A stretch of DNA of 64,000 nucleotides from Selaginella moellendorffii. Lineage: Eukaryota > Plantae > Lycopodiophyta. The stretch lies in contig NW_003314285.1 of the NCBI RefSeq assembly GCF_000143415.4, forward strand, positions 1,267,370 to 1,331,369, in the 5' to 3' direction. The translations under genes and the position numbers were made by a program. Shown here piece by piece: positions 3,271 through 56,376 of the stretch; positions within the stretch are counted from its first letter, which is position 1, and each line of letters opens with the position of its first letter. The notes under the pieces are model-generated. The model was not told where the DNA came from. It did not search any database and saw only the letters and a list, made by a program, of their open reading frames with translations.

Positions 3271-3600
3271 TGTACTGTAAATTCATAATTTTGTAGTTTG
3301 AAAAGTGGTATGAAAAGCTGTTTCCCAAATAATTTCTAAATCTCGTTTTAAATTTAAATACTTTTTCTAAGCGTGTGATGTAGTATTACAGCTGTATAAT
3401 GGTGATAAAAAACAAATAAAAGAAATCTCTATTGGACAGAAAGTTCAAGTTTTATATTCTCTTATATAAATTATATACTATTTAATATTTCCAGTAGGTT
3501 GTACTCATGTACACTAATAGGTTGTACTTCAAATTAAAAATAATGAAGCTAATTACTCTGAAATATATACTTTGGGTATTAAGATCCTAATGTTTACGGT
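3271..3600 (+). pseudogene. Hog/Hint-domain gene copy A, 5' part
   Basis: Translates across decayed introns as CTVNS*...KSCFP / DVVLQLYNGDKKQIKEISIGQK / VVLQIKNNEANYSEIY-FGY*DPNVY; colinear with copy at 14850-15861. Confidence 0.8.
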
Positions 3601-5156
3601 AAGGTAGAATAAGTAAAAGTTTCAATTGAATTTTTTATTTGGCAGATATTCACAGGATTTTGGCTAAAAATCATTTTATAGTGTTTATAAACAAATACAA
3701 CACCACATTCAATGGGGAGGGGGGAGGCCTAACAGCTCATTTAAATGAAATCTGGTTGCTATAAACCTAGGCCAGGGCATTGAGATGGAGCAACTGTTTG
3801 CAGGGAATAAATGCATGCTATGCACCTTTATATTATGTAGGTGGATTTGAGTGGTTGCTTGTCAGGTGGTACAGGATAGTGGGAAAAAGAGCAAAATGAA
3901 TATTGGGATAAGGGATCCTTGTCCTCGCAACAGATGTTCAATTGAGCAAAAATTAGATGCTAGTGGGTCCATCATGCACATGGTGCTGTCTCTTTAGCAC
4001 ATGATGAGAGGTATGTGGATTATATTGACCAGCTCCTGTATCAAAATTCTAAAGGATTGTTGTTGTGCTGGTCCAGGAAGGAACCAGTTTTGACGAAGAA
4101 TGGTTTAAGCTTAACTTGTTGAAGACAAATCCAATTATCACTAGCACTTGCATGTAAGCGACTAAATTTTCCATTCTACTTTAGTCACTTAACCATGCCT
4201 CCGACCATTTGGAGGAGTCTCATTCACAACCTCCATAAGTCCAATTCAGGACTTGGGACTTGCCAGCCCCAAGAATGGCATCCATGCCACTCAACCTTTG
4301 CACTTGGTCCAAGTGCTCCACGTGTCCGATCCCATGACCGACACCCAAAGGTATCACTGACATCTCGGCCCGTTACGCTAAGGCCATGCCCATTCACCTT
4401 TGCTGCGCAAATGGTCCAATACCACTTGCATCACCATCCTGTCTCTCCAAGACTGTGCCATCTGTCTATGAGGGGTCAACCTAGATCCACTCCTTAGCAT
4501 CCTTAAGATGCCCACAGACCTGGGGAATCGCCTTCCCCAAAGTCCCTTTGTCAGTTCCTACCAAGTCCCTTTCTGCCCCTGGCCGTGTTTGCCAACACTG
4601 CCACTGGATCGAGGTCCACAAGCCCGACCACTAAGTCCCACGGTCCTCTGGGACTTCCTCACCACACGACTGTGTCCTTGGTCACTACCCCAGAGGACTG
4701 CTCCTCTTCCTTTCCACAGTCTGGGCCTTTGGGACGACATTTCGGAACACCGTGGCCTTACGCGAGCCACCTGGGTACTCTCCCCACCTATCGCCTTTAG
4801 GTGCTCTAGCCATGGGCTTAGAGCGAGGTTCCGTTGAGCCACGCCTGGTATCCAAGTAGGTAGTGCCACCCACACTTGGACTGAGAGCATCGGCCAGTCG
4901 ATCTCCCGGGGGAACTAGAGCCGGCTCTTGAACACTTCACCAAGCTACCCCACTTGTCGGTCCGTGTTCACTCTAGTCTTGGACTTCCCAGTGGGCAGCT
5001 CATCACCCAACACTGGGTCCGGCCTTCCTGGGCCAAACTGGCCTTTCCTGGCCAAACTGGCTCCACTGCAGTCCTCCCCCTACTATACTTTTGGGGCTCA
5101 CCAAACCCCCCAGGGTCTGGGAGACGAACGCTTTGGGCTTTCACCCTCTCAGGCTC

Positions 5157-5697
5157 CGGACTCGGACTCGGACTCGGACTCGGACTCGGACTCGGACTCG
5201 GACTCGGACTCGGACTCGGACTCGGGCTCGGGCTCGGTCTCGGCCTTGGCCTCGGTCTCGGTCTCGGTCCCGATCTCGGTCTTGGTCTCGGTCTCGGTCC
5301 CGGTCTCGGTCCCGGTCTCGGTCTCGACTTCGGACTCCATCTCGGACTCCATCTTGGACTCCATCTCGGGTCCATCTCGGGTCCATCTCGGACTCCATCT
5401 CGGACTCCATCTCGGGTCCATCTCGGACTCCATCTCGGACTCCATTTCGGGTCCATCTCGGGTCCACCTCGGACTCCATCTCGGACTCCATCTCGGACTC
5501 CATCTCGGACTCCACTTCGGACTCCAACTCGGGTCCATCTCGGGTCCACCTCGGACTCCACTTCGGACTCCAACTCGGGTCCATCTCGGACTCCACTTCG
5601 GACTCCAACTCGAGTCCATCTCGGACTCCACTCCGGACTCCAACTCGAGTCCATCTCGGACTCCACTTCGGACTCCAACTCGAGTCCATTTCGGACA
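5157..5697. repeat. LTR-internal minisatellite: (GGACTC)n, (GGTCTC)n, then 12-mer (GGACTCCATCTC)n variants
   Basis: Directly visible; explains the six overlapping low-complexity ORFs. Confidence 0.95.
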
Positions 5698-8600
5698 CTC
5701 CCACGTGTCATGTGTTGGTCCTTTTGGGTCCCTTTTTGGAGCCTTGCCTTTTGCTCGCTTCGTGCTCGTTCCTCGAGCACTTCGTTGGGAGTTCCACTCC
5801 CGCTCTTGACTTTTCAAGTCGGAGCTTTTGGTCCAAACGTGTTATGCTCTTTTGGCTCTCACTTCGGCCACTACCATGTGGCGCCCTTCCGGCTCCACTT
5901 TGGGGCCTAGGGATTTTGTGTCTCACAACTCCACCACCCATAGACGAAGTTCGATGTCCTCATCGAACGGTAAACCATTTTGTAAAGTAACACCCGTATG
6001 TGTTACCATTTCCATCCTTGGCACCTAGCCAATATTTGTCAATGGTTTGACATTGAAGGCTCACCATGCCTTTTGCATATGCCTCAATGGTTTGACACCA
6101 AAGGCTCACCATGCCTTGCCTATCCTCTAAGGAGGGTAGTCTCCCCAACTTAGAGACTGATTGGACCACAAGGATTGGTTCTCTCCTTTTATTGGTTTAG
6201 TTCTCGCTAAACCTCTTAGAGACCCTTCTCTAAGTCAAACCCACTACTCCTTCTCGAGTAGTCTCAAATTCCATCGATATAACCTTTGCACTTTGGAACT
6301 TTGAATTTTGACTTCTTGGAGTCAATTTCCTAGGTGTCTCCGACACCTTGCCTTGCACCTTTTGTGCAACTCCACTTCCCATCCTAGGAAGTTCTCTACT
6401 CGAGGGCACCATCATCCTCTCTTCTATTTCGTGCCAAAGTTCCAGTTATCATACTTTGTGCTAGGGCTGTTCATGGCCCTATCATTTGGCTACCTTACCG
6501 CTCCCTCCCTTGGAGCTTCCACTTTCGCCAAATCAGAGCATTTCGGAATCCTTCCTTGGAAATACACTTCCTTTCCCGCAACTTGTTAGCGTCCAACACA
6601 TTAGTGTTCCTCGCCTAACTTTGTCACTTGGATTCCTTCCAAGGGATTCCACGGCCCTATCTTGGCCACTCATCTTTTGCTCCTATCCGTTGATTGTTGC
6701 ACCAAGCAACATCGAATCTCTACCTCCCTCCTTGAGGTATTGTTTCGGTTCCATAGCAAAGACTCTTCTTTGCCAAGTCCGGAGGATGTTCACCCCTAGT
6801 ACATCTCTTTAGCATCTTCTGCTATGGGCTCTATCCACGGCCCAACTTCGTGACCCTCCCATGGGTCTTTTATAGAGACTACTTTCCTCGGACTCACTAT
6901 GCCATCGCACGGACATAGTTTATTTCCCTTAGGTGCTCTTCCCACTTGGTCATCACGACCAAGCCACACCACCTTAAACAGTTCAATTTCAACATTTTGA
7001 ACCAGGAACTTCATTCCTTAGCCAAACAAGGACCTTGTCCTTATCTGGCCATAAGATCACCTAGTGATCTCACCTTGGCACCTTAACAGAGTTGCCAAGA
7101 GGTACTTGGTCTTCTAGACCTCCAAGTTGTTGACTATAACCCCGGGGGCATCCCCCACACTTGGCGGTGCACCCAAGCTAGCCCTTACGGCCAAGGGTTC
7201 ATAGCAACTGAGATTAGGTGTCCCCATCTCACTCACCACGACCTTGGTGCCACTTGCACCAAAGTGTTCAAGTTAGATATGCTGAGCTTTCACACTAAGC
7301 AATCTAACCGTGCATCACGACTCCGAGGCATCCCTCGCTTGGCGGTGTGCCCAAACCAGTCTCCCCACTGAGAGTCCATGACCACCGAAATATGAGTGTC
7401 CTCATATTCCAAACCATCACCACGCCCTAGTGATTTGGGACTCGAACCCAAGCACTAGAGGGTCGGGACTCGAACCCAACCTCCGTATATGCATCTACGG
7501 ACGGCATCACACTAGATGCCTGGCGTGACTCCCCACGCCGGTGCACCAACCTATTTTTAAAGCGCGCTACAGATCACAGCTTAGGAACCTAGTTCCTCCA
7601 CACTGCCAAGTCCTCTCACTTGACATGTCTGTGATCATGCATGGACTCCTCCATGCTCGGCCCCATGGCCCACCCTTTTTGAAGTTATCGCCTTCAACTA
7701 GGGTATTTGTTCCCCTGACGTGCCAATCTTGCTTGGCAAGTTCTCCGACCACTGTAACATGGTTCCTGCATAAGCGTGAAAGTCCTTGACCATCGACTTT
7801 CGTTCAAAGCCCTCTCTTTGAACACTCGGGAACTACTTCCCTAACCTTGATAGCCTTGCCTCATGGCAAGCTTCAAGACCACGCTTTTGCTGCGCCACTC
7901 TGATTTCGCGCATTCCATGAACCATTTACACTTGGCCTTTCTAGGTACTAAGCTACCTAGAATCGTCTTTGGGAACCTTGAAGGAACTCTGTCCCTCAGC
8001 TTGCTAAGGCCTCCCTTTTGCAAGCCTTCCAAATGCCACATAGTCTAACATGGACAATTCTATAACTTAGACTCTCCATGGCATCACGGTTGCTAGCGGC
8101 AACACCCTCGAGCCCCCACTTGATTCTACACTCCCAGCTGGCATAACCAACCTTGGTTATGCCCTTCGATTTCTATGGTTCAGTTCCATCCCAATACTAC
8201 TTGCCTTTGGCTTCACACCTTTCCTTCGGTCATTCTCCTCCAGACAAGGAGGATAGCTTTGCACTTTCTATCATGCTTTAGCAAGTATTCTTAGGGATGA
8301 ACCTACCCAATAGCCTAGGGAGTGGTTCCTCAATCCGGGTATGCTCACCTTATAATCCCACACATTGGGATTACATTGTTGCTTATGGGCCTTTACATGC
8401 CCATCACTAGCCTTGCCAAAATTCCATTTTTGGCTTTGTCCAACTCGGGTAGACAGTCCTCTCCTGTCTCCGCAACCTTGGACATTTGGATAGCACCTTC
8501 TATCCATCATTCGCTAGGGACTTAGTCCCTTGGGCTTTATCCATTGCCCTCGCGACATCAAACACCACCTTCTGGTGTTCTAGAGTGTTCAGGTGTCCCA

Positions 8601-11029
8601 ATGATGGCTTTCTTGACAATGAGTATTTCCTTTTATGACATTGACTTACTATATCGCAACACAAGCAACTTATCCCTCGTAAGGGTATATCCAACTTCCC
8701 TATGCTATTAAGAAGTCTTGGGTAGCTACCTTCTACCCGTTTAACCAGTTATTTTGCACCTCTTGCTTAGTTGCCTCATAGTTGTCAAGTCCTACAACTC
8801 ATTGCTTGGTGCTTTCACACCTCCATCATTATCTGGGTCACCACACTCCAACTGCATGCTCTGCAGCTTAGGCTATGCTATTCCCATTTCCATTGGGATT
8901 CCTTTGGCAAGGGTTCTCATGAACCCACCAACATAGCCTCAAGGTATTACACCTTGGCACATTTGGTGTCTCCACACCATCGGCTCCACGAGCCTACCTC
9001 TATGACACTTCTTCTTTGTGTCTAAGTCTTTGCCAAGACCAATGCCACTCTTTCTCATGCCAACCATCTGTTAGCACTACACCATAGAGGTCACACACAA
9101 CTTTGTGTCAAAGTTGTTTTCTTTTTGGGAACACCTTTCCCACGACTTTAACATGGCACATTTTGCCATCGATGAGATACCCTTTGTTCTCATCCTTGGA
9201 TCCTATGATCCCCCCCCCATCCTTTGTGGGGTACAACACACCTCAGTCCAAATGCTTCCATCAGTCCTTTTAGGACCATCCCTTGACTCTACTTGAGTCA
9301 TCCAGCAATTTTGGACTTGGTTAATCCACAGACCCGTAAGGTCCTACTTGTGAGGCACTAGCTCACTGGAATACACTTCTTGCATTCCTGTCCTACTCAA
9401 AAGGACTATTTTCACAAGTGTTACTCCGACACTTGATTTTGTTCTCTGGGGGCAACCTTTGCCCCTTAGGACTACTTGTCCATGTGATGAGAATACCAAC
9501 TCATCCACTTAATACACCCCCAACTCCTTGGGTTGTTCCAGCATTTATTAGAGGTAGCCCCGGCTACCATTTCGAGGACTCGTGTCCTCATCCATACTTG
9601 ACCTCTCACGGTCATCCATTCCAGTCTCACCTTCATGAGCACCAGCCTCAACCATATGAGGATAAACTTGTGACTCCTTTATTGTTTTTGGAGTCTTTAT
9701 CTTCCCCGTGATCCCAACTATAGTTGTTTACCCCAACTACATTAGCCCGTTTGCTGAGTCAAACGCTCATCTGGATCACCTCCTCAACTCAATGAGGAAA
9801 ACCTTGCACTGTTCCCAAGATCCCAAAGTCGTTCCATTATTGGCCCTTTTCTATCCACCACCTCGTCTACAAGTTCACACATGAACTGTAATGGAGAGCC
9901 ATGTCTTCCCGACTTGCTACTCCTCAAGGATAGGCCCACTCCTCGGACCTTCCGATGCCAACGCTAGTGGTGATATACTTGAGCACCAATAAAAGTCGGA
10001 CTAAGGAACAGCTCCGATACCAAGTTGTAAGCGACTAAATTTTCCATTCTACTTTAGTCACTTAACCATGCCTCCGACCATTTGGAGGAGTCTCATTCAC
10101 AACCTCCATAAGTCCAATTCAGGACTTGGGACTTGCCAGCCCCAAGAATGGCATCCATGCCACTCAACCTTTGCACTTGGTCCAAGTGCTCCACGTGTCC
10201 GATCCCATGACCGACACCCAAAGGTATCACTGACATCTCGGCCCGTTACGCTAAGGCCATGCCCATTCACCTTTGCTGCGCAAATGGTCCAATACCACTT
10301 GCATCACCATCCTGTCTCTCCAAGACTGTGCCATCTGTCTATGAGGGGTCAACCTAGATCCACTCCTTAGCATCCTTAAGATGCCCACAGACCTGGGGAA
10401 TCGCCTTCCCCAAAGTCCCTTTGTCAGTTCCTACCAAGTCCCTTTCTGCCCCTGGCCGTGTTTGCCAACACTGCCACTGGATCGAGGTCCACAAGCCCGA
10501 CCACTAAGTCCCACGGTCCTCTGGGACTTCCTCACCACACGACTGTGTCCTTGGTCACTACCCCAGAGGACTGCTCCTCTTCCTTTCCACAGTCTGGGCC
10601 TTTGGGACGACATTTCGGAACACCGTGGCCTTACGCGAGCCACCTGGGTACTCTCCCCACCTATCGCCTTTAGGTGCTCTAGCCATGGGCTTAGAGCGAG
10701 GTTCCGTTGAGCCACGCCTGGTATCCAAGTAGGTAGTGCCACCCACACTTGGACTGGGAGCATCGGCCAGTCGATCTCCCGGGGGAACTAGAGCCGGCTC
10801 TTGAACACTTCACCAAGCTACCCCACTTGTCGGTCCGTGTTCACTCTAGTCTTGGACTTCCCAGTGGGCAGCTCATCACCCAACACTGGGTCCGGCCTTC
10901 CTGGGCCAAACTGGCCTTTCCTGGCCAAACTGGCTCCACTGCAGTCCTCCCCCTACTATACTTTTGGGGCTCACCAAACCCCCCAGGGTCTGGGAGACGA
11001 ACGCTTTGGGCTTTCACCCTCTCAGGCTC

Positions 11030-11600
11030 CGGACTCGGACTCGGACTCGGACTCGGACTCGGACTCGGACTCGGACTCGGACTCGGACTCGGACTCGGGC
11101 TCGGGCTCGGTCTCGGTCTCGGTCCCGATCTCGGTCCCGGTCTCGGTCCCGGTCTCGGTCTCGGTCCCGGTCTCGGTCTCGACTTCGGACTCCATCTCGG
11201 ACTCCATCTTGGACTCCATCTCGGGTCCATCTCGGCGTCCATCTCGGACTCCATCTCGGACTCCATCTCGGGTCCATCTCGGACTCCATTTCGGGTCCAT
11301 CTCGGGTCCACCTCGGACTCCATCTCGGACTCCATCTCGGACTCCATCTCGGACTCCACTTCGGACTCCAACTCGGGTCCATCTCGGACTCCATCTCGGA
11401 CTCCATCTCGGACTCCACTTCGGACTCCAACTCGGGTCCATCTCGGGTCCACCTCGGACTCCACTTCGGACTCCAACTCGGGTCCATCTCGGACTCCACT
11501 TCGGACTCCAACTCGAGTCCATCTCGGACTCCACTCCGGACTCCAACTCGAGTCCATCTCGGACTCCACTTCGGACTCCAACTCGAGTCCATTTCGGACA
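11030..11600. repeat. Same minisatellite in the second LTR, different unit count and order
   Basis: Directly visible. Confidence 0.95.
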
Positions 11601-12009
11601 CTCCCACGTGTCATGTGTTGGTCCTTTTGGGTCCCTTTTTGGAGCCTTGCCTTTTGCTCGCTTCGTGCTCGTTCCTCGAGCACTTCGTTGGGAGTTCCAC
11701 TCCCGCTCTTGACTTTTCAAGTCGGAGCTTTTGGTCCAAACGTGTTACGCTCTTTTGGCTCTCGCTTCGGCCACTACCATGTGGCGCCCTTCCGGCTCCA
11801 CTTTGGGGCCTAGGGATTTTGTGTCTCACATTGCACTCCTTTTTGTTATTGAGAGGTAGTAATGATTTAGCATTGCCAATTTGACACAAAAGGAAGGATG
11901 ATGGGCATTTAGCTGGTGGGGAAGGGATTGGAGGGGTGGAGGTCAGACTTAAAATTCTATATTATTTATAAATTAATTTTAAAATTTTAAGAATAATCAA
12001 AAATATTAA

Positions 12010-12700
12010 TTTAGAACTTTATAAATGATGTTTTGTTATTTTTACTGGGAAACTTTTTGCTTATAATATAACAGGCAAAATTGGACTTTTTTAATAATTC
12101 TTTTGTGTTAAACATTGAATTGTAAGTATTTATATTTTACAAAATCTTGGACTTAACAACCTTCTTAAACAGGTGATGCAATAATGGCAATAAAGGCAAT
12201 TAAAAGAAAATAATATCAAAGATAAGGGTTAATCATTTTTTGGGTATATTAGGGAACTTAATATTTTATAGTAGTTGCAATTTCAAATTCAAATACTACA
12301 AGGTCAAATAGATTATTCTGATATATATGATTTCAGACATCAATTTTTTTTCTTACAGATATTTTTTTTATATTAACATGGAAAGTATAAATGTATTATT
12401 TTTATTTTATAATTTTATAAACGGGTAAAGGTTTTTTTCTTATTTAATTTTTATATACAATCATCTATATGTATGCTATTTATATTACTAAAAATGATGT
12501 ATTATTTTTTTTAATCAGGAAAAGTTTTATCCTATAATGTAATTGTTAAGAAAATATCAGAAAATACTTAATCTATCAATTTCAACAAAAACATAGACTT
12601 TATAGCCCATTGACATCTAATTGTTAATGATATTGTTGAATCTGCTTTCATCTTTACTTTTGTATATTTTTCTCCTTCAATCAAACTTCCAGCATATAAA
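12010..12700 (+). pseudogene. Hog/Hint-domain relics: exon-4-like piece (~12020-12075) and strongly decayed copy B (~12173-12700)
   Basis: cag|GTGATGCAATA (GDAI) at 12173; TTCTGATATATATG; QKHRLYSPLT-LIVNDIV at ~12586-12640; reverse-complement match to 15090-15660. Confidence 0.7.
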
Positions 12701-13585: not shown

Positions 13586-14640
13586 ATGGTGTCTTATGAG
13601 GAGGAACGACGGCGACGGGTAGAGGAGAACAAGAAGCGATTGAAGGTAAGCCACTTTCCTCGCTTGGCCAGACATAAAAGAAAATCCTCTTTCACTCCTG
13701 CGCTTGCAGGAACTGGGTATAGCGGAGATCAGCAAGGAGATCGCCCAGCAGACCACACTGGTGGCTTCCAAGAGAGTAAGCTTCACAAAACTCGCTGCTT
13801 CTAGGCCATTTCCCACATCGATTGATCCAGGCGAGGAAGCGTTGCTCAAGGTCAGCTGAGAAATCCGTCTTGTGTGTACGGAGGTCTTCTCGAGTCTCAT
13901 CGAATCCTCGTCCAAACTACAAACTGGTAGAATAGTATCTCTCGTCTTTCTTTCCAAGATAATCTGTTGTTCTTGGATCACAGGATGACGAGCCCCGTCT
14001 GCCTCGAAGAAGGTATGTCTCCCACGAGCTCTAGAAATTTTCTAAGACGTTTCTCGCAGTTCTGGGCGATCGTCTCGGATATCTCCAACCAGCTTTTGCT
14101 CACAGGAGGACAGAATGGCAGCCATTGGGGCCGCGGAAAAGATCCAGCAAAGTTTAGATCGTCCTTCCACTGTCAAGACGATGCTCCAGTCCCACGTCTC
14201 TGGAGGATTCTGGCTGGTAAATCTCCTGTTTGAGCATGCTAGCGAAAGATTAACAAGAAAGAGATCTTCTTGCAGAGCTTACCACTCTCATTTGCGAAGA
14301 AACACTTGCCAAAGAAGGACACGATGATCACCCTCGAGGACAGCGACGGGCAGGAGTCCGAGTCCTTTTATTTGGCGTACAAGAACGGACTTAGCGGCGG
14401 ATGGCGTGGTTTCTCCATTGATCACAAGCTGCAAGACGGCGATGCTCTCGTCTTCGAGCTCATGGAACCTACACGTCTCAAGGTCAGTTCATAGAAAGCG
14501 AAATGAGAAAACGTCTTACAGTGGGTTTGTCTACACAGGTTCACATTGTTCGAGCTGCCGACTACCAAAGGAGCCAAGGCAAAAACATCACAGATAAGGC
14601 ACAGCTTGCAAAAGGAGTCGCAGGTAGACTAGAAAGATGA
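13586..14640 (+). CDS. Single-B3-domain (REM-type) DNA-binding protein, multi-exon
   Basis: MVSYEEERRRRVEENKKRL; VKTMLQSHVSGGFWL; GLSGGWRGFSIDHKLQDGDALVFEL; GT-AG introns; TGA 14638-14640. Confidence 0.9.
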
Positions 14641-14849
14641 CAATGTCTGCTGTTTACAGCTAGTTCTTGTCATTACATCTATCAATGCAAAGAAGTGAAA
14701 TCAAGCACAAAATCAATGCAAAGAAAATAAAATTACGCACTTACTCTTACATAAAAAGCTAGTAGAAAAATTATTATATTTAAGAAACAAAGAGAAATTA
14801 TTTTTATTTGTTAGGAACTTATTCTTTTAATATTTATAGTTTTATATTT

Positions 14850-15861
14850 TTAGTCTAATATTTTTGTTTTCCAAATGAGTTTCCACAATATTCCAGCTCC
14901 AATGATATAGTTAATTATTATTTCATTACTATTAAGAAAATGATATAACTGTAGGTAAGATTTAGTATTTAGAGACTTATATAAAACTCAAATAGGATAT
15001 AAAATATTTTGATATACATAAGGTAATAAAGAGCTTAATTTGAAAAACTTAAATATATTATCTAAAAACCAATCACTATGTGGTGATACAATAATATCAT
15101 TAACAATTAAATCTCCAAATATAATGTAAATGGGTTATAAAGTCCATGCTTTTGTATAATTTAAATACCTAAAATTTACAAATAAAGAAAATAAAATTAT
15201 TCCAACTTACTTGTTATATTATAAGTTAAAACTTTTCCTAATTTTTCATTTAAAAATAACAACACATCATTTGTAGTAATGTCAATTGCATATTTATAGA
15301 TTATTGAACCTACACAAAAATTTAATAGAAATAAAATTTTATTTTAAACACTTTTACCTGTTTTTGATACGATTGGAATAAAGTGTAAAGGGGACAATTC
15401 AATACTTTTATTATTTTCAATATTAATGTGAATAAAGTCTTCATAAGCATTAGGATCTTGATGGCCAAAAGCATATATATCAGAAAAGCCTATTTCACCA
15501 TTTTTAGCTTGAATGGCAACCTGTTAGAAAAAGCTAATATCAATTTTCATACACATAAGAAAAGTATAAATATATAAAAATTAAAACCTTATCTCCAATA
15601 GCTATATCTTTAATTTTCTTTTTATTCCCATTATAAAGTGTTAATATTGCATCACCTGTTAGCAAAGAAAGATTAATTTAAGTAAACAACAAGATTAATA
15701 GAACAACATTAAGAAGTTACTGGAAAACGCTTCTTTGCTTTTTTGCAAATGTGATTTACACATTTATAACCGCTCAGACATTGTGAATTTATAGTACATG
15801 AATAAATATGATTTGGTAAAACATAAAGCACAAATAAAATGTAAACTATAAAACTTTTCAT
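14850..15861 (-). pseudogene. Secreted Cys-rich peptide + Hedgehog-type Hog (Hint + SRR-like) precursor, 5 exons, disabled (copy C)
   Basis: Exons 15861-15721, 15655-15588, 15520-15358, 15309-15211, 15168-14850 translate to signal peptide, CTINSQCLSGYKCVNHIC, (R)FPGDAILTLYNGNKKKIKDIAIGDKV, FSDIYAFGHQD, IELSPLHFI, GLYNPFTL-GDLIVNDIIVS, YQNILYPI*VLY; two stops, two frameshifts. Confidence 0.88.
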
Positions 15862-15934
15862 TTTAAAGATATGTTATAAAGAAGTTATGTTTTTTTAAAA
15901 AAATCCCAAATACAAGTTATTTAGTAAATTACAC

Positions 15935-16690
15935 TAGTAAAATCAAGCTCTTTAAATTTAAGCCACTTATGTGCACCAATCCAAACTTTACAACAAAAAT
16001 ATAGTGTTATATGGCCAAACCATGTACTCCGAAAATATAAAACACAAAAATGAAGATTTAACAGCTATTATCTCTTCATCTACTTTGATAAGTGAGCCAC
16101 TTTATATATCTATCATAACTAGAATCCATAAGTGTGTTCTAGGGTGTATTAGACGAAGCAGCTTATGCTTCCATCAATAGGCTAGAAACTTCAGTAAATA
16201 TAACTAGAATCCATATGTGTGTTCCAGGGCGTATTAGACAATGTCAAGGATTGAACTCCAGTAAATTCAAGCTCTTTAAATTTAAACCACCTATATGCAC
16301 CAATCCAATGTTATAACAGGAATGTAGTGTCATATAGCCAAACCATGTACCCCTAAACTATAAGACACAAAAAGTAAAGGCTTAACAAGTATTATTTCTT
16401 GTCTACTTAGAATCCACAAGATTGTAGTGTTAATGTGGCCAAACCATATACTTTTAAAGTATAAGACAAAAAAGGTAAAGGCTTAACAATTACTATCTCT
16501 TTGTCTATTTTGATAAGATTATAATTAAAATCCAAGTGTATTCTAGGGTGTATTAGATGATGTTGAGGATTTAACTCTAGTTCAGTCAGGCTCTTTAAAT
16601 TTAAGCCACCTATATGTACCAATCCAAACGTTATAACAAAAATGCAATATTATATGCTAAATCACGTACTCATAAGCCATTTCTCTATAT
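15935..16690. repeat. Degenerate tandem repeat, ~320-bp period, ~2.5 copies
   Basis: GCTCTTTAAATTTAA(G/A)CCAC..ATxTxCACCAATCCAA at ~15945, ~16270, ~16590; sub-repeat TGTxTTCxAGGGxGTATTAGA three times. Confidence 0.8.
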
Positions 16691-16881
16691 ATTTAAATCC
16701 TAATGAATTTTTTCTTAAGTTATTCCTTTTAGTTGCTTATACGAAGGATCATTAAAACTTTTGATAGTTCCAATTTCATAGAATGGAAACATTTTATAAA
16801 ATTTATTTTAAAGGCTAAAAGTATGTGTATCAAGAAAAGGGCATTTAGAATAGTAGAGAGGATAAAGTTTTATTAAGGTGA

Positions 16882-18561
16882 TGTAAATGATTAATTTTTC
16901 ATTCTTCTTTAGTCATTTAACCACACTTCTGACCACTTGAAGGAATCTCACTCATAACCTCCATAAATCTTATTCTAAACTTGGGACTTGTTAGCCCTGA
17001 GAATAACATCTATGCCACTCAACTTTTGCATTTAGTTTAAGTGTTTCATATATCTGATCCCATAATTGACACTCAAAGGTACCATTAACATATCAACCCA
17101 TTACACTAAGGCCATACCTATTCACTTTTGTTACACTAGTGATCTAACACCACCTACATCACAATTTTGTCTCTTAAAGACTAAACCATCCATCCATAAG
17201 TGATCATCTCAAATTCATTCTTTAGCATCCTTAGGATGGTGGCAGACATAGAAAATAACCTTCCTCAATATCCTTTTCTTAGCCCCCACTAAGTCCCTTT
17301 TCGTTCACGGCCATGTTTGCCAACACTGCCAATGGGTCAAGGCCTATAGGCTTGACCATTATGTCCTATTGACTTTTGAGATTTTCTCACCATATGACCG
17401 TATACTTAGTCTCTATACAAGAGGATTGCTCTTCTTTCTTTCCACAGTCCAAAACTTTAAGATAACATTTTGGAACACCATAGCCCTACACGAGTCTCAC
17501 CCACCTTTTGCCTTTGAGTGCCGTAGCCATGTGGCTAGAGCGAGGTTCTTATGAGCCATGCCAAGTATCCAAGTAGATATTGCCACCCACACTTGGATTA
17601 AGAGTATTGATCATTCGATCTCCCGAGGGAGCTAAAGCTAGCTTTTGAATACTTCACCAAACTACTCCACTTGTTTGTCCATATTCACTTTAGCTTTGGA
17701 TTCTTTAATGGATATATTATCACGCAACACATGGGTATAACTTTTCTTGGTCACACTAGCCTTTCCTAACTAAACTAATTCCACTACCACACTCTCCCTT
17801 CTATACTTTTGGAACTCTTTGCCCTTTGCCCACCCCAGGAGATGATCACTTTGGGCTTTCACCCCACAAACTATATTAGTATTCAAACTCAAACTTGGAC
17901 TCAGACTTGGTCTCGGTCTCAACCTCATTCTCAGTCTAGGTCTTTGTCTCAGTCTCATTCTTGATCTCGAGTCTTGTCTTGGGGCCATCTTGGACTTTAT
18001 TTCAAATCCATCTCAGACTCTATCTCGAACTCCATCTCGGGTCCATCTCGAACTCTATTTTGGACTCCATCTTAAGTCCATTTTAGACTCCATCTCGGAT
18101 CTATCTTAAACTCCATCTTGGACTCTATTTCGAACTCTATCTTAGGTCTATCTTAGATCCATCTTGTACTCCATCTCGGGTCCATTTCGGACTCCATCTC
18201 AGGTCCATTTCAAACTCCATCTCGGGTCTATCTTAAACTCCATCCCAAACTCCATCTTGGACTCCATCTCAGAATCTATCTCAAGTCCATCTCATATCCA
18301 TTTCATACTTCATCTCGGGTCCATCTTGGACTCTATCTTAAATCCATCTTGGACTCCATCTCAGGTCCTCTAGTGTCCCTTTTCTAAAGACTCACATATT
18401 ACTTGTTTCATGCTTGTTTCTTGGGAGTTCCACTCTTGCTCTTGCCTTTTCAAGTTGTAACTTTTAATCCAAACATGTTATGCTTGTTTGGCTTCCGCTT
18501 CAACCACTATCATGTGGCACCCTTTTAGCTCCACTTGGGGCTTAGGGATTTGTGTCTCATA
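16882..18561 (-). mobile_element. Solo LTR of the 4153-11830 family, aged
   Basis: Colinear with LTR 4153-5927 end to end with many C>T/G>A changes; TSD GGTGA (16877-16881, 18562-18566). Confidence 0.92.
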
Positions 18562-19579
18562 GGTGATTATCTTGAAATGGAATAAGAATGAGAAGTTTGA
18601 TAAATTCATTAAGGATATGAAAAGTCTTTACATTCTGGAGTTGACAACAAAATTCTAGTTCCACTTCAATTATTTTTCTTTTTGAGTGTATTACTAAATT
18701 TCTTTCATTCTTTTGCAACAACTTGATGCAAGTGAATAAACTAAAGCTTAACCAAACCATATCTTCTGTCAGGGAAGAAATTGTAATGGGAAAAGACCTT
18801 AGAATGGTAGACTCTAAAGAGTTGGTATTGTACTTAAGAAGCTCCAAGCAAAAAGCCTCCAAACAAAAAGGCAAAATGCAAGAAGATTTTTTCAAATACA
18901 AAAAGAAGGATGCTAACAATGATAAAAAGAGTCAAGTTTGTAAGTATTGCCAAAAAGGCTCTCACATTACCTCTGAATACAAGAAGAAATGAAAAATTTT
19001 ACTAATCTCAAATCCTCTAAATCTATTATAAATTATGAGAAGTTGATTAAAGAAGCAAATATAGCCACAACAATTAGTCACCTCTTATTAGAAATCCATG
19101 AGAAACCAACTCATTTTCTATTGGATTCTAGTGCTACATCTTACTTTATATGGGACAAAGAAGATTTTGTTCACTACAAATCTTATCTTGAAGAACATAT
19201 TATACAATTTAGGGGAAATTGTGAACATGAGGCTGTTGGTATTGGTGACATTCAAGTCCCAGCCACAAATACCTTAGTTGTCTTCACAGAAGTCATGCAT
19301 GCTCTTAGTCTACATAAAGACTTAATTTCTATTCTATTGCACATATGGTAAGTAATGGGTAACAAACTTTATTTGATTTTAACTCTTGTGTTATCATCAA
19401 TGCTAATATTGGGGTGATCATAGCAACAACTCCAAGAAAAGGTAATCTTTATTACTTGGGAAATGAGAAGTCTATAATCATTACTTTTGCACTGCCAACA
19501 AAAACAACAATGAGGTATGTGGTCATTTAAGTTTTAAAAGTTTATAACTCTAGAAGGCATGGTGACAAGCTAAACTCTT

Positions 19580-22500
19580 TGTAAGCCATAAATTTTTCCT
19601 TTCCAATTTGCCAATTTACTTCATCTATCTGATCAACATTTCCTTGGACTTAGCTAAGTTCCTTCGCCAAGGTTCCCACCTATGGTACTGGCTCCTACTT
19701 GGTTTCAGCTACTCACTACATGAGAAACAGAGTGTTAACCATCCATCTACGGATTCCCAAATCTCTCCCAATCCCCCTCCCAGGGTTAGATTAGATTTAA
19801 GGTTCAGCTACACTCCCCGCAGGCACAAGCAGCCAAACACACCAAGCCTCTAGATTCCTAACATCCCTTGGTACCATAAGACTTGATTATGGGACCCTCT
19901 AAATCCCAAGCCTTGAGTGCAACACTTGCTCTGGGACGTGGGAGGGAAACACCATGGCCTAACAGCCCGGTATAGGTACCTTTACTCCCTCACTTCCATC
20001 CCAAAGGGAAGGCCCAAGCCCCTAGGTAGGGTAAAGACTAATGAGCTGCATGGTACTCAAGTAAGGCACCACTCCACATGAGCTGAGAACACCACAGTCG
20101 GTTTCCCTTCTGAGAGTGGGAGCTGCTCTTGAGCACTTCCTGGGGTGGCCCCTCAGGCACCACCCAAGTCCATGCTCACTCCCACCCAAGGCCCCTCGGC
20201 CTCAGTCTCAACCTCAAGTCAGTTTGGAAGCACCATTGAAGAGTTCTTTCAAGATTGATTCCCGAACCTCACTATCCCTACTATACTTTTGGAACCCCCT
20301 ACAGTCCCCCTTGGGAGACACACACTTTGGGCTTTCACCCCTTGACTTGTATTAGTACTCAAACTTGGTTTCGGACTTAATCTCGGACTTGATCTCAAAC
20401 TCGACCTCGGACTCGGTCTTGGACTTGATCTCAGACTCGACCTTGGACCCGATCTCGGACTCGACCTCGGACTCAGTCTCAGACCTGATCTCGGATCTCG
20501 GACTCTGTCTCGAACTCGGTCTCAGTGTCAGCCTTGGACTCGATCCCAGACTCTATCTCGAACTTGGTCTCAAAGTCGGTCTTGGACTCAATCTCAAACT
20601 CAGTCCCATCCGATGAACTCTTTATCATTTCGGTCATGCTTTTAGAGATCCTTTAGCGTACGATACCTTAAGGAGTTGGTTCCTTACAATTCCACCACCC
20701 ACAGAAGAATTTCGATGCCCTCTTTTATAATCCTATGACTTGTTGACCATGTCTTTGGGGGTATCCCCCCATTTAGCGGTGTGCCTAAGTTAACCTCCCC
20801 AGCTAAGAGCCCATGACAACAGAATATAGGTGTCCCTACCTCACCACACCCTAGTATGGGGTTGGGACTTGAACCCAACTTTGCTTACTAGGGGGTTAGG
20901 ACTCAAACCCAACCTTCGTAGAATACGTCTACGGATTCGACATCCCCACAAGGAATCGGGCGTAGTTCCCTATGCCTGGTCAACTTAGTTAACCCATGCT
21001 AGTTAGCTAACCTTCGGCATGCCTTTGGGTCCCAACATATGCCATTGCTCAACTTTACAAATTGATACTTTTAATTGAACTTTGCATAAGTACATAGAGT
21101 TCTACTTTGCAGAAATTCCTCCAATAGATCTCGCGCGTTTGCTAGGTTCTCCTCCGGTTCCCAAATTGCTTCGCAATGTGGAAATCCTTTCCATATCACA
21201 TGGAACTCCTTCACCTTGCGTCTTTGTCACTTTCTCTTGCGTGCATTAAGGATGGCCTTGACTTCATATTCCTTTAAGGAACTCAAGATCAGTTCATTTC
21301 TAGGAATACATGCATTTTTACCTTTGAGTCAACTTTCGGCTAATCCCACTTGGTAGCCTTAGGTTCTTGGTGTTCAGCCACACCTTCTCCCCAGAGTTGA
21401 ACTTTACGTCCTGGCGCTTCTGGTTTGCATACTTGGTTTGCCTTTGTTGAGCCTGTTCCAAGGAATCCCTCACTAGATTCCAAATGTTGGTATTTCCACC
21501 GTGAATGCCTTCATTGCAAGTAACTCTTCATGATACTCGGCCATGCTGAGTTCCACAAAACCTTTAATAGCTCACCCATTGATGACTTCCCATGGACTCA
21601 CCCCAATACTCAAGTGTTGTGAGTTGTTATAACACATTTCCGCAAGTCCCAAATGACTTACCTAATCAGTCTGGTCCTCCGAGACATAGTATCGCAAATA
21701 ATCCTTCAGCTACTTATTCATCCTTTCCGTTTATCCATCTGTCAAGAAGTGTTAGTGCCATCAAACTTGACTTAATACCCAATACTTATCTGTGGGTGAT
21801 AGGCTGTGCTGAATTTCAATTTGGTGTGATACTGTTCCAAAAGAGTTCTCCAGAACCTACTGGTGAAGATATTATCTTGATCTGAGATAATCTCGTCTGG
21901 CCTTCCCCACACTCAAACCATTTATTTGAAGAACAACTTTGCCACACCTTCCGCATCCACTTCCGTTGTGATGGGTATGAAATGTGCCATCTTTGAAAAT
22001 CGGTCCACCACCATGAATATTGCATCAAACCCGGAGTCTCGTGATGAAGTCCATCGTAAAACATTTTCATGGACAATTTGGAATTGGGATGCTTTGTAAC
22101 AAGCCCCCACTAGCCTTAGTCACGGTTTTGACCTGTTGACATATTGGACATGTCTTTACATAGTTTTGGACATCCTTAGCCATATCTAGCTGGTGATACT
22201 TCCCCTTGAATAACCCTATTGTCTTGGGCACTTTGCTGTGTCTCGCAAGAAGTCCGTCATGACACTCTTTTAAGGTTACCTTCCTTAGTTCCCCTTCTAG
22301 AACATACACCCTCGTCTGTTTATAATAGATGAGTCCATTGTGTTCAGTATAACCTATTTTCTCTTCTGTTAGCAACTCACCTCTCTAGTGAATTTCTCGT
22401 GCCTCTTGGTTCCTCATCAACACTTCTTGTGCTAGACCATCATTCTCATATGTTATCCGCACATCATCCCAAAATGTTGCTGTTGTGCTAAATATCGCCA

Positions 22501-25500
22501 ACTTCAAGCTTGCCTTTTGACTTAGAGCATCTGCCATGATGTTGCTCTTCCCAAGTTTATACAAAAATCTCGCAATCAAACTCGGCCAAAGCATTGGCCC
22601 ACCGACTTTGTTTCCCTCTTAGGTCGGCCTGCGAGAAGAAGTGTTTTATTGCCACATTATCTGCGTAAACTTTGAAGTGCCTCCCAAGGTAATGTCACCA
22701 CTCCTTGAGTGCCTTGACTAGCGCAAATAATTCCTTCTCATGGGCAAGCCACTTTTGCTGAGCCTTATCCAACTTCTTCGAGAAGAACGCCACTAGATGG
22801 TTGTCTTGCTTCAAAACTGCGCCTAACACAAAGTCCGAAGCATTTATTTCTACCTCAAAGTCTTTACCAAAGTCTGATAATGCCAACACGGGAGTCTTCC
22901 TCAACTTCCCTTTGAGGTGGACAAATGCCACATCGCATTCCACTGTTCATACCATCTTCCCTTTACCCATTTGGTCCGTTAAGGTAGGACTACTCTCAAA
23001 TAGTGTTTAATAAACTTTCAGTAGTAATTGCATGTATAGCCCCAAAAACACCCTCAACTCATGTACATTCAATGGTTGCTCCCATTCCTAGATCACTTGG
23101 ACCTTCTTAGGGTCCATCTTGACCTTGTCCTTGCCCACCACATGCCCGAGAAACTTTAACTCTTGTTAAGCAAAGTCACATTTGCTCTCTTTAGCATACA
23201 GCTTGTGTTCCTTTAATTTTTCAAACACCTTCGTCAAGTGTTCGGCATGCTCCTCTAGCGTTTTGCTATAAATCAAAATGTCGTTAATATAAATGACCAC
23301 AAAGTGATCCAGATAGGGTACAAAGATGTGGTTCATCAAAGCCGAAAACGTTGTAGGCGCATTGCACAACCCAAAGGGCATCACCAAAAACTCAAAACTC
23401 CCATACCTTGTCCGATAAGTTGTCTTCTTAATATCTTCTTCTGCTACCCTGATTTGGTAGTATCTTGACCTTAGATCAATCCTTGAGAAGTATTTTGCCT
23501 TTCCCAACCTATCGAACAAGTCTTCAATTCTTGGTAAAGGGTATTTATTCTTCTTTATATATTTGTTGAGCAACCAGTAATCTATGCACATGCACATAGA
23601 TCCATCTTTCTTTTTCATAAATAACACCAGCACCCCATACAGTGACTTGCTCAACATAACATACTCTTTGTCCCTAACTTTTTTAGTTAGTGCTTGAGCT
23701 CCTCGAGTTCCTTTTCATTCAAACAATAGGGTGGACGAACCATCATCTTAGCACCCTCAACCAGCTCAATCTTATGTTCTATTGGTAGTGCGAGGGGCAA
23801 CCCCGCTAATAGCTCCTCCGGCATGGTATCTTGGAATTGGTCTAACACCCGTTGAATCCCTAAAGGTACTTCTTCTGTTCCCATCTTTTTGTCACTCTTC
23901 ACCGAGAGTAAGCACAAAAATGTTGCCTTAGTTCCTTTAGTGAGTTGTCCTCTCGTGGACACCAGGTTTAAGCAGGAGTCTTTGGCTTTACTTTGCCCTA
24001 CCTTTAGATCTTAGTCCTCCACCCTGGATTGTTCTCCCCGGGCATTCGCCAGTACCACAAGATTCCTACTTTGTCTATATAGGGCTATTACGAACTAATT
24101 GAACCAATCCATCCCAAAGATTACGTCAAATCCTGCCATTTCCAACACAGTGAAATCTATGTCTACTTTCCATATTTCTACTTTGACTCTCGCTTGTCGA
24201 AGTACCTCATCGGTGTTTTGGCTACCTTGAACAAACTCTATAATCCTTGGTTCACCTAGCTACTGCACTGTTAGTCTAGTTTGCCAGACTACAAAATTAT
24301 CTGAAGCACCCGTGTCAATAAGGATCATAACAAAGTTACTTTCGAGCTTCCCTCGGAGGGTTAGTAAATGTCACGAACGACTCTCTACCAAAGTTGCTTG
24401 TAATGAGTAACTTTGAGTTAGTTACTGGATCACGTACCTCAATTTGGATTTCACCCAATTTAATGGCTATATTGGCTTTGGCCTTTTTCAAATAGGGATA
24501 TTCCCTCGAAAAGTGTTCTACTTCACTGCAATTAAAGCATATATTGTTTCTCACGCTACTAATTAACTTGATCTTTTTATCCATGGGTTTGTCTCGTTTT
24601 GCGTGACTCCCCTATGTACTTGCTCGCTGGCCACTAGATCTACCTTTCTGGAACCCTAAGGACTCATTTTTAGAAAAACACTTCTTGAATTTCTCTTTGC
24701 CATATGTTCCCCTTGGTTTGGCCCCTTTGCTAAATGTGAACCCCAACCCCGTTGTGTTCCCCTTTTACAGGTTATTATTGAAATGCACCTTGATAGCCGC
24801 ATCCAACGCTTCCTTGTAGTTGGTCGGGTTCTAGTGCATCACCTCGCCGCAAACTTAGGTTTGCAAGCTTGATATGAAGATGGATGGCTAACACTCCGTT
24901 GCTCGTGCAGTGAGTAGCTGAAACCAAGTAAGAGCTAGTACCATAGGCAAAAACCTTGGCAAGGGAGCTTAGCTAAGTTGTAGCGCACGTGGTTTTGACC
25001 CTTTATCCTATGGTGATTTACCATAGGATAACACCACGAAGCGGAACTTAAACCCTCTTTATGCCACGTGACACATGCCACGTGTCATATGCCACATGTC
25101 CAAAGGATAGTGGTGCGGAACCCAAGGTTCAGGGCCTTGGGCCACTAAAAGAAGGAACGGTGCCAAAACCCCCAAGCACGAAGCTAAGGAGTGACAAAAC
25201 TGAACCACGGAGCAACTCCTGAGCATGCAGCCCAAGGAGCGTAGGGACAGAGGCCCGGAGCGACTTGGAACAGTCCACTAGCTAGCATGGTGTGGAGCTT
25301 GGGCTTAGACCCAAGCCGGACGCAGAACAAGGACAGGCACCCAAGCAGGAGCTAGACTATGCCTTAGGTTGGTCGGCCATGCTCGACCTACCCACTATCC
25401 CTACTATACATTTGGAACCCCCCCCCCCCCCCCCCTTTGAGGAACACACGCTTTGGGCTTTCACCCCAAGCCTCCCTTAGTGTCAAGAGTTAGTCTCTAG

Positions 25501-46885: not shown

Positions 46886-46979
46886 CTCGTGTTAGAAACT
46901 TCTGTACATTTTAGAACATATTTACAAACTCCTAGCATGATTGTGCTAGCTAGAAAGATGATGGTCGATTATCAACCAT

Positions 46980-56330: not shown

Positions 56331-56376
56331 GTGAAAGGTACAAGCATCTCTAAAACTCTTATCGCTGGTTCGCGTC

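What the first reader, a model, noticed from the sequence alone, without database searches (positions are those of the whole stretch)
14850..15861. Hidden 'mini-hedgehog' gene: signal peptide + 4-Cys peptide + Hog autoprocessing domain
Seen: five exons with GT-AG introns in very AT-rich DNA give MKSFIVYILFVLYVLPNHIYS-CTINSQCLSGYKCVNHICKKAKK-[R]FPGDAILTLYNGNKKKIKDIAIGDKV..FSDIYAFGHQD..IELSPLHFI..GLYNPFTL-GDLIVNDIIVSPHSDWFLD..YQNILYPI*VLY..hydrophobic tail. Known: CFPGD, (T/S)xxH and GxYxPxT..G.IxV are Hint-domain blocks; in Hedgehog the Hint + sterol-recognition region cleaves before the Cys and attaches cholesterol to the N-terminal product. Hog domains are not a feature of flowering plants, although to my recollection some were noted in non-seed plants. 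Inference: an intact family member would release a secreted ~23-aa two-disulfide peptide, possibly sterol-linked, i.e. an uncharacterised lipidated-peptide signalling or defence system. This copy is dead (Cys1 TGT>CGT, two stops, two frameshifts).
Basis: partly seen in the sequence, partly recalled or inferred. Interest (0 to 1): 0.92.

Follow-up and report, generated by a model that had tools for sequence, protein, structure and literature searches.

The report
Dead allele of spikemoss Hog gene
This is a broken, silent copy of a small hedgehog-like self-cleaving gene of the spikemoss Selaginella moellendorffii; the copy on the other haplotype is intact, and because plant genes of this family were described in 2008 it confirms known biology rather than revealing a new system.

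Summary
Window 14850-15861 (minus strand) holds a five-exon gene relic in 23% GC DNA. It encodes a signal peptide, a 23-residue basic four-cysteine peptide, a Hedgehog-type Hint/Hog domain and a hydrophobic tail. A profile built from non-Selaginella Hog proteins scores it at 244 bits.

It is one haplotype's allele of Selaginella moellendorffii SELMODRAFT_424733 (UniProt D8SQW0, 'Hedgehog protein Hint domain-containing protein'). GenBank carries that gene only as a truncated 130-aa model.

The other haplotype (GL377634.1) has an intact 262-codon reading frame. The window allele carries five disabling changes:
- the catalytic Cys is replaced by Arg;
- one base is deleted at the exon-1 donor;
- there are two premature stops;
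- there is a 2-base insertion.

Three RNA-seq runs contain both haplotypes and express the adjacent B3 gene. They give no reads over the Hog gene.

Plant Hog genes were described by Bürglin in 2008, and nematode 'Shog' genes already show 15-25-residue cargos. This scan had also noted a sister gene 4.5 kb before the window and another Hog elsewhere in the genome.

What is new is modest: the full gene model, the dead/intact allele pair, and strongly CpG-depleted AT-rich islands around each copy. Peptide release and any lipid attachment remain untested.

The parts
15799..15861 (-). Exon 1, part 1: start codon and 21-residue signal peptide (MK + hydrophobic core, ending IYS)
   Evidence: Translation. 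Kyte-Doolittle peak at residues 1-20 of the intact allele. The cleavage site is inferred from the -3/-1 rule, not from a predictor.
15730..15798 (-). Exon 1, part 2: 23-residue cargo peptide with 4 Cys (C-x5-C-x5-C-x4-C), Lys-rich, no acidic residue
   Evidence: intact allele: 5 K+R, 0 D+E, 4 Cys. Conserved in paralogue D. Only sub-threshold Pfam similarity to small Cys modules such as EB (19.4 bits, cutoff 24.3).
15727..15729 (-). Lesion 1: the codon of the catalytic first Cys of the Hog domain reads CGT (Arg); the other haplotype and paralogue D have TGT/TGC (Cys)
15720..15721 (-). Lesion 2: one base (G) missing at the exon-1 donor (window CCA|GTAAC, other allele CCAG|GTAAT), so exon 1 and exon 2 are out of frame
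   Evidence: exon phases taken from the intact allele
15588..15655 (-). Exon 2: start of the Hint domain (Hint block A)
   Evidence: Pfam Hint profile positions 16-38. The exon2/exon3 junction is the same as in the annotated model P0001.
15358..15520 (-). Exon 3: Hint core, with His at the general-base position (FGHQD) and the S-x-x-H version of the TxxH motif (SPLH)
   Evidence: Pfam Hint 6.9e-5, profile positions 42-88. phmmer hit to P0001 at 96% identity. Alignment to 1AT0/6TYY.
15211..15309 (-). Exon 4: middle of the Hint domain
14850..15168 (-). Exon 5: end of the Hint domain (GLYNPFT..VSPHSDWFLD), a conserved adduct-recognition-like region (LP..YQ..L.PIR.LY), a hydrophobic tail and the original stop. 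It carries lesion 3 (TAA at 15161-15163), lesion 4 (+TA at 15122-15123) and lesion 5 (TGA at 14988-14990).
   Evidence: The allele's exon 5 hits Pfam Hint profile positions 134-162. A Logan contig of run X1 matches 14659-15394 with no difference, covering lesions 3-5.
14701..16100 (.). AT-rich, CpG-depleted island that contains the whole gene (GC 0.234, CpG observed/expected 0.26)
12170..12650 (+). Copy B: heavily decayed Hog relic in its own AT-rich island (sister copy, not part of this gene)
3323..3600 (+). Copy A: truncated, decayed Hog relic (end of exon 1 to exon 3) in an AT-rich island

Best explanation
The feature is a pseudogenised allele of a lycophyte Hog gene, Selaginella moellendorffii SELMODRAFT_424733.

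Shown:
- It is a five-exon gene for signal peptide + 23-aa basic four-Cys peptide + Hedgehog-type Hint domain + conserved C-terminal region + hydrophobic tail.
- The window haplotype carries five disabling lesions: the catalytic Cys is replaced by Arg, the exon-1 donor has lost a base, there are two premature stops, and there is a 2-base insertion.
- The other haplotype keeps an intact 262-codon frame.
- Both haplotypes are present in the plants used for three RNA-seq runs, and neither allele gives reads there.

Inferred for the intact allele:
- The precursor enters the ER and the signal peptide is removed after residue 21.
- The Hog domain, held at the membrane by its C-terminal hydrophobic segment, makes an N-to-S acyl shift at Cys45, helped by the S-x-x-H motif.
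- The thioester is resolved by a nucleophile activated by His at the general-base position (water, or a hydroxyl-bearing lipid such as a phytosterol). This frees a 23-residue, two-disulfide, cationic peptide for secretion.

The window allele can do none of this. It has no Cys1, and its mRNA, if any were made, would terminate four codons into exon 2.
For: - Anatomy and lesions.
- Hog identity: Pfam Hint on pieces and on the allele's annotated model (43.4 bits, cutoff 29.7). Family-profile scores are 244 bits for the window copy and 262 bits for the intact allele. The intact allele is 41% identical over residues 35-238 to Diphasiastrum Hog P0020, E 2e-58.
- Solved structures: the best matches are Drosophila Hedgehog autoprocessing domains 6TYY and 1AT0.
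- Fold: a model of the lycophyte relative (pLDDT 84) superposes on 6TYY/1AT0 at TM 0.95 and rmsd 1.9 Å, better than on any intein.
- Allelic status: the window is colinear with GL377634.1 at 94-97% identity. At 9 of 11 variant sites in the neighbouring B3 gene, the alternative letters in the RNA reads are the GL377634.1 letters, mixed with window letters.
- Silence: depth 0 over 14729-16400 against 10-40 over B3. None of the indexed RNA runs listed holds the sampled words.
- Relaxed constraint on this allele: using paralogue D as outgroup, 6 of 8 polarisable non-synonymous changes are on the window lineage.
- Past function of the subfamily: dN/dS is 0.30 between paralogues C and D at dS 0.55. 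An open 262-codon frame at this composition has a chance probability of about 1e-11.
Against: - Nothing contradicts 'dead Hog allele'.
- Against present-day function of the intact allele: no RNA evidence; strong CpG depletion of all Hog islands (0.10-0.36, against 0.82 in neighbouring genes), which suggests long-term methylation; two further decayed copies in the cluster; paralogue D on the GL377634.1 haplotype lacks a start codon and part of its signal peptide.
- Against a Hedgehog-like mechanism in detail: the residue equivalent to C143, reported as essential for Hedgehog autoprocessing (PMC12054796), is Pro here, and Asp46 is His.
- The signal-peptide cleavage site and the membrane anchor are inferred from hydrophobicity only.
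Confidence: 0.9

Rival explanations
1. The whole AT-rich mini-cargo Hog subfamily, including the 'intact' allele, is already non-functional. On this view it is a silenced, methylated gene cluster in slow decay, and the open frame on the other haplotype is only the last survivor.
For: - Zero RNA reads from either allele in three runs that express the neighbouring gene from both haplotypes.
- No indexed RNA run holds the sequence.
- CpG observed/expected is 0.10-0.36 in all three islands.
- Copies A and B are decayed.
- Copy D on GL377634.1 has lost its ATG and 20 bases of its signal peptide.
- The alleles differ by 22 non-synonymous and 10 synonymous changes.
Against: - A 262-codon open frame in 23% GC DNA has a chance probability of about 1e-11.
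- dN/dS is 0.30 between paralogues C and D.
- Most polarisable non-synonymous changes lie on the window lineage, not on the intact one.
- Only three RNA samples, of unknown tissue, were read. Gametophyte, reproductive or stress-specific expression is not excluded.
Confidence: 0.35
2. The five lesions are sequencing or assembly errors in very AT-rich DNA, and the window allele is really intact.
For: Two of the lesions are small indels in low-complexity context (GG>G and a TA dinucleotide), the kind of error long-read assemblies make.
Against: - Three lesions are base substitutions.
- Lesions 3-5 lie inside a 736-base contig, assembled separately from public run X1, that matches the window without a single difference. 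That run may, however, be the window's own source.
- The allele also carries an excess of derived non-synonymous changes.
Confidence: 0.04
3. The AT-rich island is foreign DNA (contamination, giant-virus insertion or recent horizontal transfer) rather than a native plant gene.
For: GC is 23% inside a 45-50% GC neighbourhood, with sharp borders.
Against: - The island is present at the same place between the same genes on both haplotypes.
- It has four short spliceosomal GT-AG introns.
- Its nearest relatives are Hog proteins of a lycophyte, a moss-like sequence and a green alga.
- No relative was found in IMG/VR viral contigs.
- The composition fits CpG decay in place.
Confidence: 0.03

Closest known systems
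Plant Hog proteins of Bürglin 2008 (pSm Hog from S. moellendorffii ESTs DN839649/DN837769; pPp Hog from Physcomitrella; PMC2362128)
   Same: - Same Hog domain type: CFPGD start, FGH, S/T-x-x-H, GLYNPFTL, HS.WFLD, LP..YQ..LAP.R, and a hydrophobic C-terminus.
- Same species for pSm Hog.
- The motif-J cysteine is replaced, as that paper noted.
- A signal peptide is present.
   Different: - pSm Hog is a different paralogue with ordinary composition. It is expressed (ESTs), and its signal peptide runs almost directly into CFPGD.
- pPp Hog and the Diphasiastrum Hogs carry cargos of about 200-270 residues.
- The gene here is AT-rich, has a 23-residue four-Cys cargo, and has no transcript evidence.
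Hedgehog C-terminal autoprocessing domain (Drosophila HhC; PDB 1AT0 and the D46H mutant 6TYY)
   Same: - Best sequence match among solved structures.
- The model of the lycophyte relative superposes at TM 0.95.
- Cys1, the x-x-H of TxxH, and a following helical region are shared.
- The natural His at the general-base position equals the engineered D46H, which keeps activity and widens sterol tolerance (PMC8529194; PMC12054796).
   Different: - There is no Hedge signalling domain; the cargo is 23 residues.
- The C143 equivalent is Pro.
- Thr69 is Ser.
- There is a C-terminal hydrophobic anchor.
- Plants have no Patched/Smoothened-type Hedgehog pathway (my own background knowledge).
- The window allele lacks Cys1.
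Nematode short-cargo Hog genes (Xiphinema Shog1/Shog2, Trichinella Xhog3; Bürglin 2008)
   Same: Same architecture: signal peptide, then a very short predicted N-terminal product (15, 25 and 34 residues), then the Hog domain.
   Different: They come from an unrelated lineage, their cargo sequences are not comparable, and neither set has been studied biochemically.
Inteins and bacterial intein-like (BIL) domains
   Same: Same Hint fold and the same first step, an N-S acyl shift at Cys1.
   Different: - There is no C-extein and no terminal His-Asn plus downstream nucleophile.
- Pfam Intein_splicing scores only 18.2 bits against a cutoff of 35.8.
- Structural matches are weaker (TM 0.7-0.85) than to Hedgehog (0.95).

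Membership tests
Hedgehog-type Hint/Hog domain (Pfam PF01079) | Significant match to the family profile over the whole domain | tested here: met
   - The allele's annotated model scores 43.4 bits against a cutoff of 29.7.
- Window exon pieces hit colinearly at profile positions 16-38 and 42-88, and the allele's exon 5 at 134-162.
- A profile of non-Selaginella Hogs gives 244 bits for the window copy read with X at the breaks.
Hedgehog-type Hint/Hog domain (Pfam PF01079) | Catalytic Cys as the first residue of the domain (C-F-P-G) | tested here: not met
   The window allele has Arg (CGT at 15727-15729). The other haplotype and paralogue D have Cys. The feature is therefore met by the gene but not by this copy.
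Hedgehog-type Hint/Hog domain (Pfam PF01079) | TxxH motif (T69, H72 of Drosophila HhC) | tested here: met
   The motif reads S-P-L-H. The His is conserved, and Ser replaces Thr as in most green-lineage relatives.
Hedgehog-type Hint/Hog domain (Pfam PF01079) | General base Asp46 that activates the sterol hydroxyl | tested here: not met
   The residue is His (FGHQD), as in all relatives aligned. The engineered D46H enzyme is active (PMC8529194; PMC12054796), so this is a variant rather than a loss.
Hedgehog-type Hint/Hog domain (Pfam PF01079) | Second catalytic Cys (C143, motif J 'SCYA') | tested here: not met
   The aligned residue is Pro (VSPHS). Relatives have T, A, V, P or C. Bürglin 2008 reported the same replacement in plant and red-algal Hogs.
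Hedgehog-type Hint/Hog domain (Pfam PF01079) | C-terminal adduct/sterol-recognition region after the Hint fold | tested here: met
   A conserved LP..YQ..L.P.R.LY..L....Y..LY block is shared with the Diphasiastrum, moss-like and Coccomyxa proteins. It is helical in the relative's model, residues 173-255. Whether it binds a sterol cannot be tested with these tools.
Hedgehog-type Hint/Hog domain (Pfam PF01079) | Hint fold | tested here: inconclusive
   The fold was tested only on the Diphasiastrum relative (41% identical): TM 0.95 and rmsd 1.9 Å to 6TYY/1AT0. The spliced Selaginella protein has no reference and was not folded.
Hedgehog proteins proper | N-terminal Hedge signalling domain (HH_signal) | tested here: not met
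   The cargo is 23 residues. There is no Pfam HH_signal hit, only sub-threshold small-Cys-module similarities.
Inteins | Splicing-competent C-terminal block (His-Asn plus downstream Cys/Ser/Thr) and a C-extein | tested here: not met
   Intein_splicing scores 18.2 bits against a cutoff of 35.8. The domain is followed by a Hog-type helical region and then the stop codon.
Self-cleavage and lipid transfer (what the family does) | Autoproteolysis at Cys1 with transfer to a sterol or another nucleophile | not testable with these tools
   This needs protein biochemistry.

The most novel reading that the evidence does not exclude
They would use a Hog domain with a natural His general base and no second catalytic Cys to release, and perhaps esterify to a phytosterol or another lipid, a 23-residue cationic two-disulfide peptide. 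That would be a lycophyte-specific lipidated-peptide defence or signalling system. It would be housed, like the secreted lectin genes that earlier notes of this scan report, in CpG-depleted AT-rich islands.
Probability: 0.15. Interest if true: 0.75.

Novelty: new member of a known kind. Interest (0 to 1): 0.3.

Why it matters
No Hog protein outside animals has a known function or a demonstrated cleavage chemistry. This locus offers three practical things:

- **A corrected gene model.** The full-length model replaces a mis-annotated database entry.
- **A natural control pair.** The two alleles in one plant differ at the catalytic Cys. The intact allele is the test protein and the window allele, with Arg at position 45, is a built-in negative control.
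- **A natural example of the His-for-Asp general-base swap.** So far that swap has been studied only as an engineered Hedgehog mutant.

The gene also adds a case to the pattern of secreted-protein genes in AT-rich, CpG-poor islands of this genome. As it stands, the window copy itself is an ordinary pseudogene of a family known since 2008.

Tried and rejected
- **Word-indexed protein searches gave almost nothing.** P0001 found only itself. Exon 5 of the intact allele found no candidate. The Diphasiastrum Hog region found six proteins. Because of the length window and the word filter, these blanks say little about copy number.
- **Viral origin.** The IMG/VR scan found no relative. This is a weak negative.
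- **A fourth Hog copy in the AT-rich patch at 52601-53200.** None is there; it is upstream DNA of a RING-type ORF.
- **Folding the Selaginella protein itself.** The spliced 262-residue sequence has no reference and I did not type it, so I folded the lycophyte relative instead.
- **Checking copy D on the window's own haplotype.** It lies outside the window and I could not fetch it. I could only read the GL377634.1 version.
- **Zhao et al. 2019 (D46H).** The paper is not held. I cite secondary accounts instead.

Full report
**What is in the sequence**

The exons are 15721-15861, 15588-15655, 15358-15520, 15211-15309 and 14850-15168, and every intron begins GT and ends AG.

The DNA is 23% GC inside a neighbourhood of 45-50% GC. 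The conceptual product has five parts:
- a 21-residue signal peptide;
- a 23-residue Lys-rich peptide with four cysteines;
- a CFPGD-type Hint domain, whose first residue here is Arg;
- a conserved helical region;
- a short hydrophobic tail.

**Is it a Hog domain?**

Yes.
- Exons 2 and 3 alone hit Pfam Hint PF01079 colinearly, at profile positions 16-38 and 42-88.
- A full HMMER scan of 1.8 billion representative proteins with exon 3 returned Hog-type proteins carrying CFPGD/CFPSD, FGH and HSDWFLD motifs.
- A profile built only from non-Selaginella relatives scores the window copy, read with X at each break, at 244 bits (E 1.7e-76) over residues 26-241.
- The best solved-structure matches by sequence are the Drosophila Hedgehog autoprocessing domain 1AT0 and its D46H mutant 6TYY.
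- An AlphaFold model of the closest full-length relative with a reference, Diphasiastrum P0020 (pLDDT 84), superposes on 6TYY/1AT0 at TM 0.95 and rmsd 1.9 Å. That is better than on any intein or BIL domain. The model continues into a helical C-terminal region.
- I could not fold the Selaginella protein itself, because the spliced sequence has no reference.

**Whose gene is it?**

The top hit, P0001, is 96% identical in exon 3. It is EFJ13329.1, SELMODRAFT_424733 of Selaginella moellendorffii, UniProt D8SQW0, named 'Hedgehog protein Hint domain-containing protein'. Its scaffold, GL377634.1, is colinear with the window at 94-97% identity. The same neighbours are present (B3, DUF308, Cpn10, PPR, GH5, clathrin), apart from two large insertions present only in the window.

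In three RNA-seq runs the neighbouring B3 gene shows mixed letters. At 9 of 11 variant sites the alternative letter is the GL377634.1 letter. The window and GL377634.1 are therefore the two haplotypes of the same heterozygous plant line, and the finding is one allele of an annotated gene.

It has a different first exon and a premature end, so it lacks the signal peptide, the cargo, Cys1 and the last exon.

**Dead here, intact there**

Base-by-base alignment and the list of differences show five disabling changes in the window allele:
- TGT>CGT at the catalytic Cys (15729).
- Loss of one G at the exon-1 donor, between 15721 and 15720. Exon 1 then joins exon 2 out of frame, with a stop four codons later.
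- TAC>TAA (15161).
- An extra TA (15122-15123).
- CGA>TGA (14990).

On GL377634.1 all five sites are intact. The five exons give an open 262-codon frame with canonical splice sites. At this base composition, the chance of such a frame being open is about 1e-11.

The two alleles differ by 32 exon substitutions (10 synonymous, 22 non-synonymous) and 14 intron substitutions. Using paralogue D as outgroup, six of the eight polarisable non-synonymous changes lie on the window lineage (C45R, T75A, S143F, Y160*, I211N, R217*) and two on the other.

A 736-base contig assembled from public run X1 matches 14659-15394 without a difference and covers three of the lesions. It may come from the same sample as the window.

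**Expression**

Three RNA-seq runs, each read to about 12%, give depth 10-40 over the B3 gene with two GT..AG joints. They give zero reads from 14729 to 16400 at a 90% likeness threshold, which would have caught both alleles. None of the indexed RNA runs of this species that were listed holds the sampled words. So there is no transcript evidence for either allele. The tissues are unknown to me.

**The family around it**

The window holds two further, much more decayed copies: A at 3323-3600 and B at 12170-12650. A fourth copy, D, lies beyond the window's start.
- On GL377634.1 (locus L002, 12850-13794, minus strand), D has an open Hog frame of about 240 codons and a four-Cys cargo. Its exon 1 has no ATG and has lost 20 bases of the signal peptide.
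- Earlier notes of this scan describe D on the window haplotype as intact. I could not check that.
- Between C and D, dS is 0.55 and dN/dS is 0.30: 0.30 for the Hog part and 0.43 for the 21 aligned cargo codons. The subfamily was therefore under purifying selection for most of its history.

All three islands in the window are strongly CpG-depleted (observed/expected 0.10-0.36). The neighbouring genes are at 0.82 and the inserted retroelement blocks at 0.45-0.63. This fits long-term cytosine methylation and deamination as the cause of the AT-richness, and it fits the transcriptional silence.

**Catalytic residues**

The active site of Drosophila HhC is C1, D46, T69, H72 and C143 (PMC12054796). 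The equivalents here are as follows.
- C1 is Cys in the intact allele and Arg in the window.
- D46 is His (FGHQD), as in every relative aligned.
- T69 is Ser.
- H72 is kept.
- C143 is Pro.

The engineered D46H Hedgehog retains autoprocessing and accepts more sterols (PMC8529194; PMC12054796). His at this position is therefore compatible with nucleophile activation.

C143 is reported as required for Hedgehog autoprocessing through a branched thioester. Its absence means that, if these plant domains cleave, they do so by direct attack on the Cys1 thioester. Bürglin had already noted the replacement of this cysteine in plant and red-algal Hogs.

**Likely mechanism of the intact allele (inferred, not shown)**

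1. The protein enters the ER and the signal peptide is removed.
2. The Hog domain sits in the lumen, tethered by the C-terminal hydrophobic segment (Kyte-Doolittle peaks at residues 1-20 and 240-255).
3. An N-S acyl shift occurs at Cys45.
4. The thioester is resolved by water or by a lipid hydroxyl.
5. The 23-residue, two-disulfide, net positive peptide is released.

The window allele can do none of this.

**What is known already**

Bürglin (2008, PMC2362128) reported Hog genes in S. moellendorffii, S. lepidophylla and Physcomitrella, with signal peptides. He found none in Arabidopsis and other higher plants. His pSm Hog, taken from ESTs, is a different paralogue with ordinary composition, and its signal peptide runs almost directly into CFPGD. 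The same paper describes nematode Hog genes whose predicted N-terminal products are only 15, 25 and 34 residues.

The nearest relatives of the protein studied here are Hogs of the lycophyte Diphasiastrum (41% identity, E 2e-58), a moss-like sequence and the green alga Coccomyxa. That supports vertical descent. No relative was found in viral contigs. I found no functional study of any plant Hog.

**Verdict**

The copy is an ordinary pseudogene allele of a partly annotated member of a family described in 2008.

The modestly new points are:
- the corrected full-length gene model;
- the dead/intact allele pair;
- the four-Cys mini-cargo subfamily;
- the CpG-depleted AT-rich islands around each copy.

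Release of a secreted peptide, and any lipid link, remain hypotheses.

Noticed in passing
L001:10001-11157 (GL377634.1, the other haplotype): The GenBank/UniProt model EFJ13329.1/D8SQW0 (130 aa) is truncated and partly mis-spliced. The locus supports a 262-aa, five-exon gene (L001 10220-11239) with a signal peptide, cargo, Cys1 and a full Hog domain.
   Followed up: yes
L002:12850-13794 (-): Paralogue D on the GL377634.1 haplotype has an open Hog frame and a four-Cys cargo, but no start codon and a 20-base deletion in the signal-peptide region. Earlier notes call D on the window haplotype intact. If so, each haplotype may keep a different working copy.
   Followed up: partly
window 4145-11835 and 16486-33370: Two large blocks (7.7 kb and 16.9 kb) are present in the window but absent from the colinear GL377634.1 haplotype. 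They look like haplotype-specific retroelement insertions, on either side of the Hog/B3 segment.
   Followed up: partly
window 15911-16656: About three tandem units of roughly 320 bases (with sub-repeats of 40-103 bases) lie directly upstream of the Hog start codon. The annotated model's spurious first exon lies in the equivalent region of the other haplotype.
   Followed up: no
window 14000-14650 (+): The B3-domain gene next door is transcribed from both haplotypes in three RNA-seq runs. Introns were confirmed at 14216-14274 and 14481-14536 (GT..AG).
   Followed up: yes
window 3201-3700, 11901-12700, 14701-16100: All three Hog-bearing islands have CpG observed/expected of 0.10-0.36, lower than the inserted retroelement blocks (0.45-0.63) and far below the neighbouring genes (0.82). 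Earlier notes of this scan report secreted lectin genes in similar AT-rich islands elsewhere in this genome, which suggests a shared class of silenced secreted-protein genes.
   Followed up: partly
window 52601-53200: Another 22% GC patch with no Hog similarity. It lies just upstream of, and overlaps the start of, a 147-aa ORF with a RING-H2-like Cys/His pattern (53093-53536).
   Followed up: partly
window 46814-62120: Five nuclear tRNA genes lie within 15 kb: Asp-GTC, Ser-TGA, two Trp-CCA and Leu-AAG.
   Followed up: no
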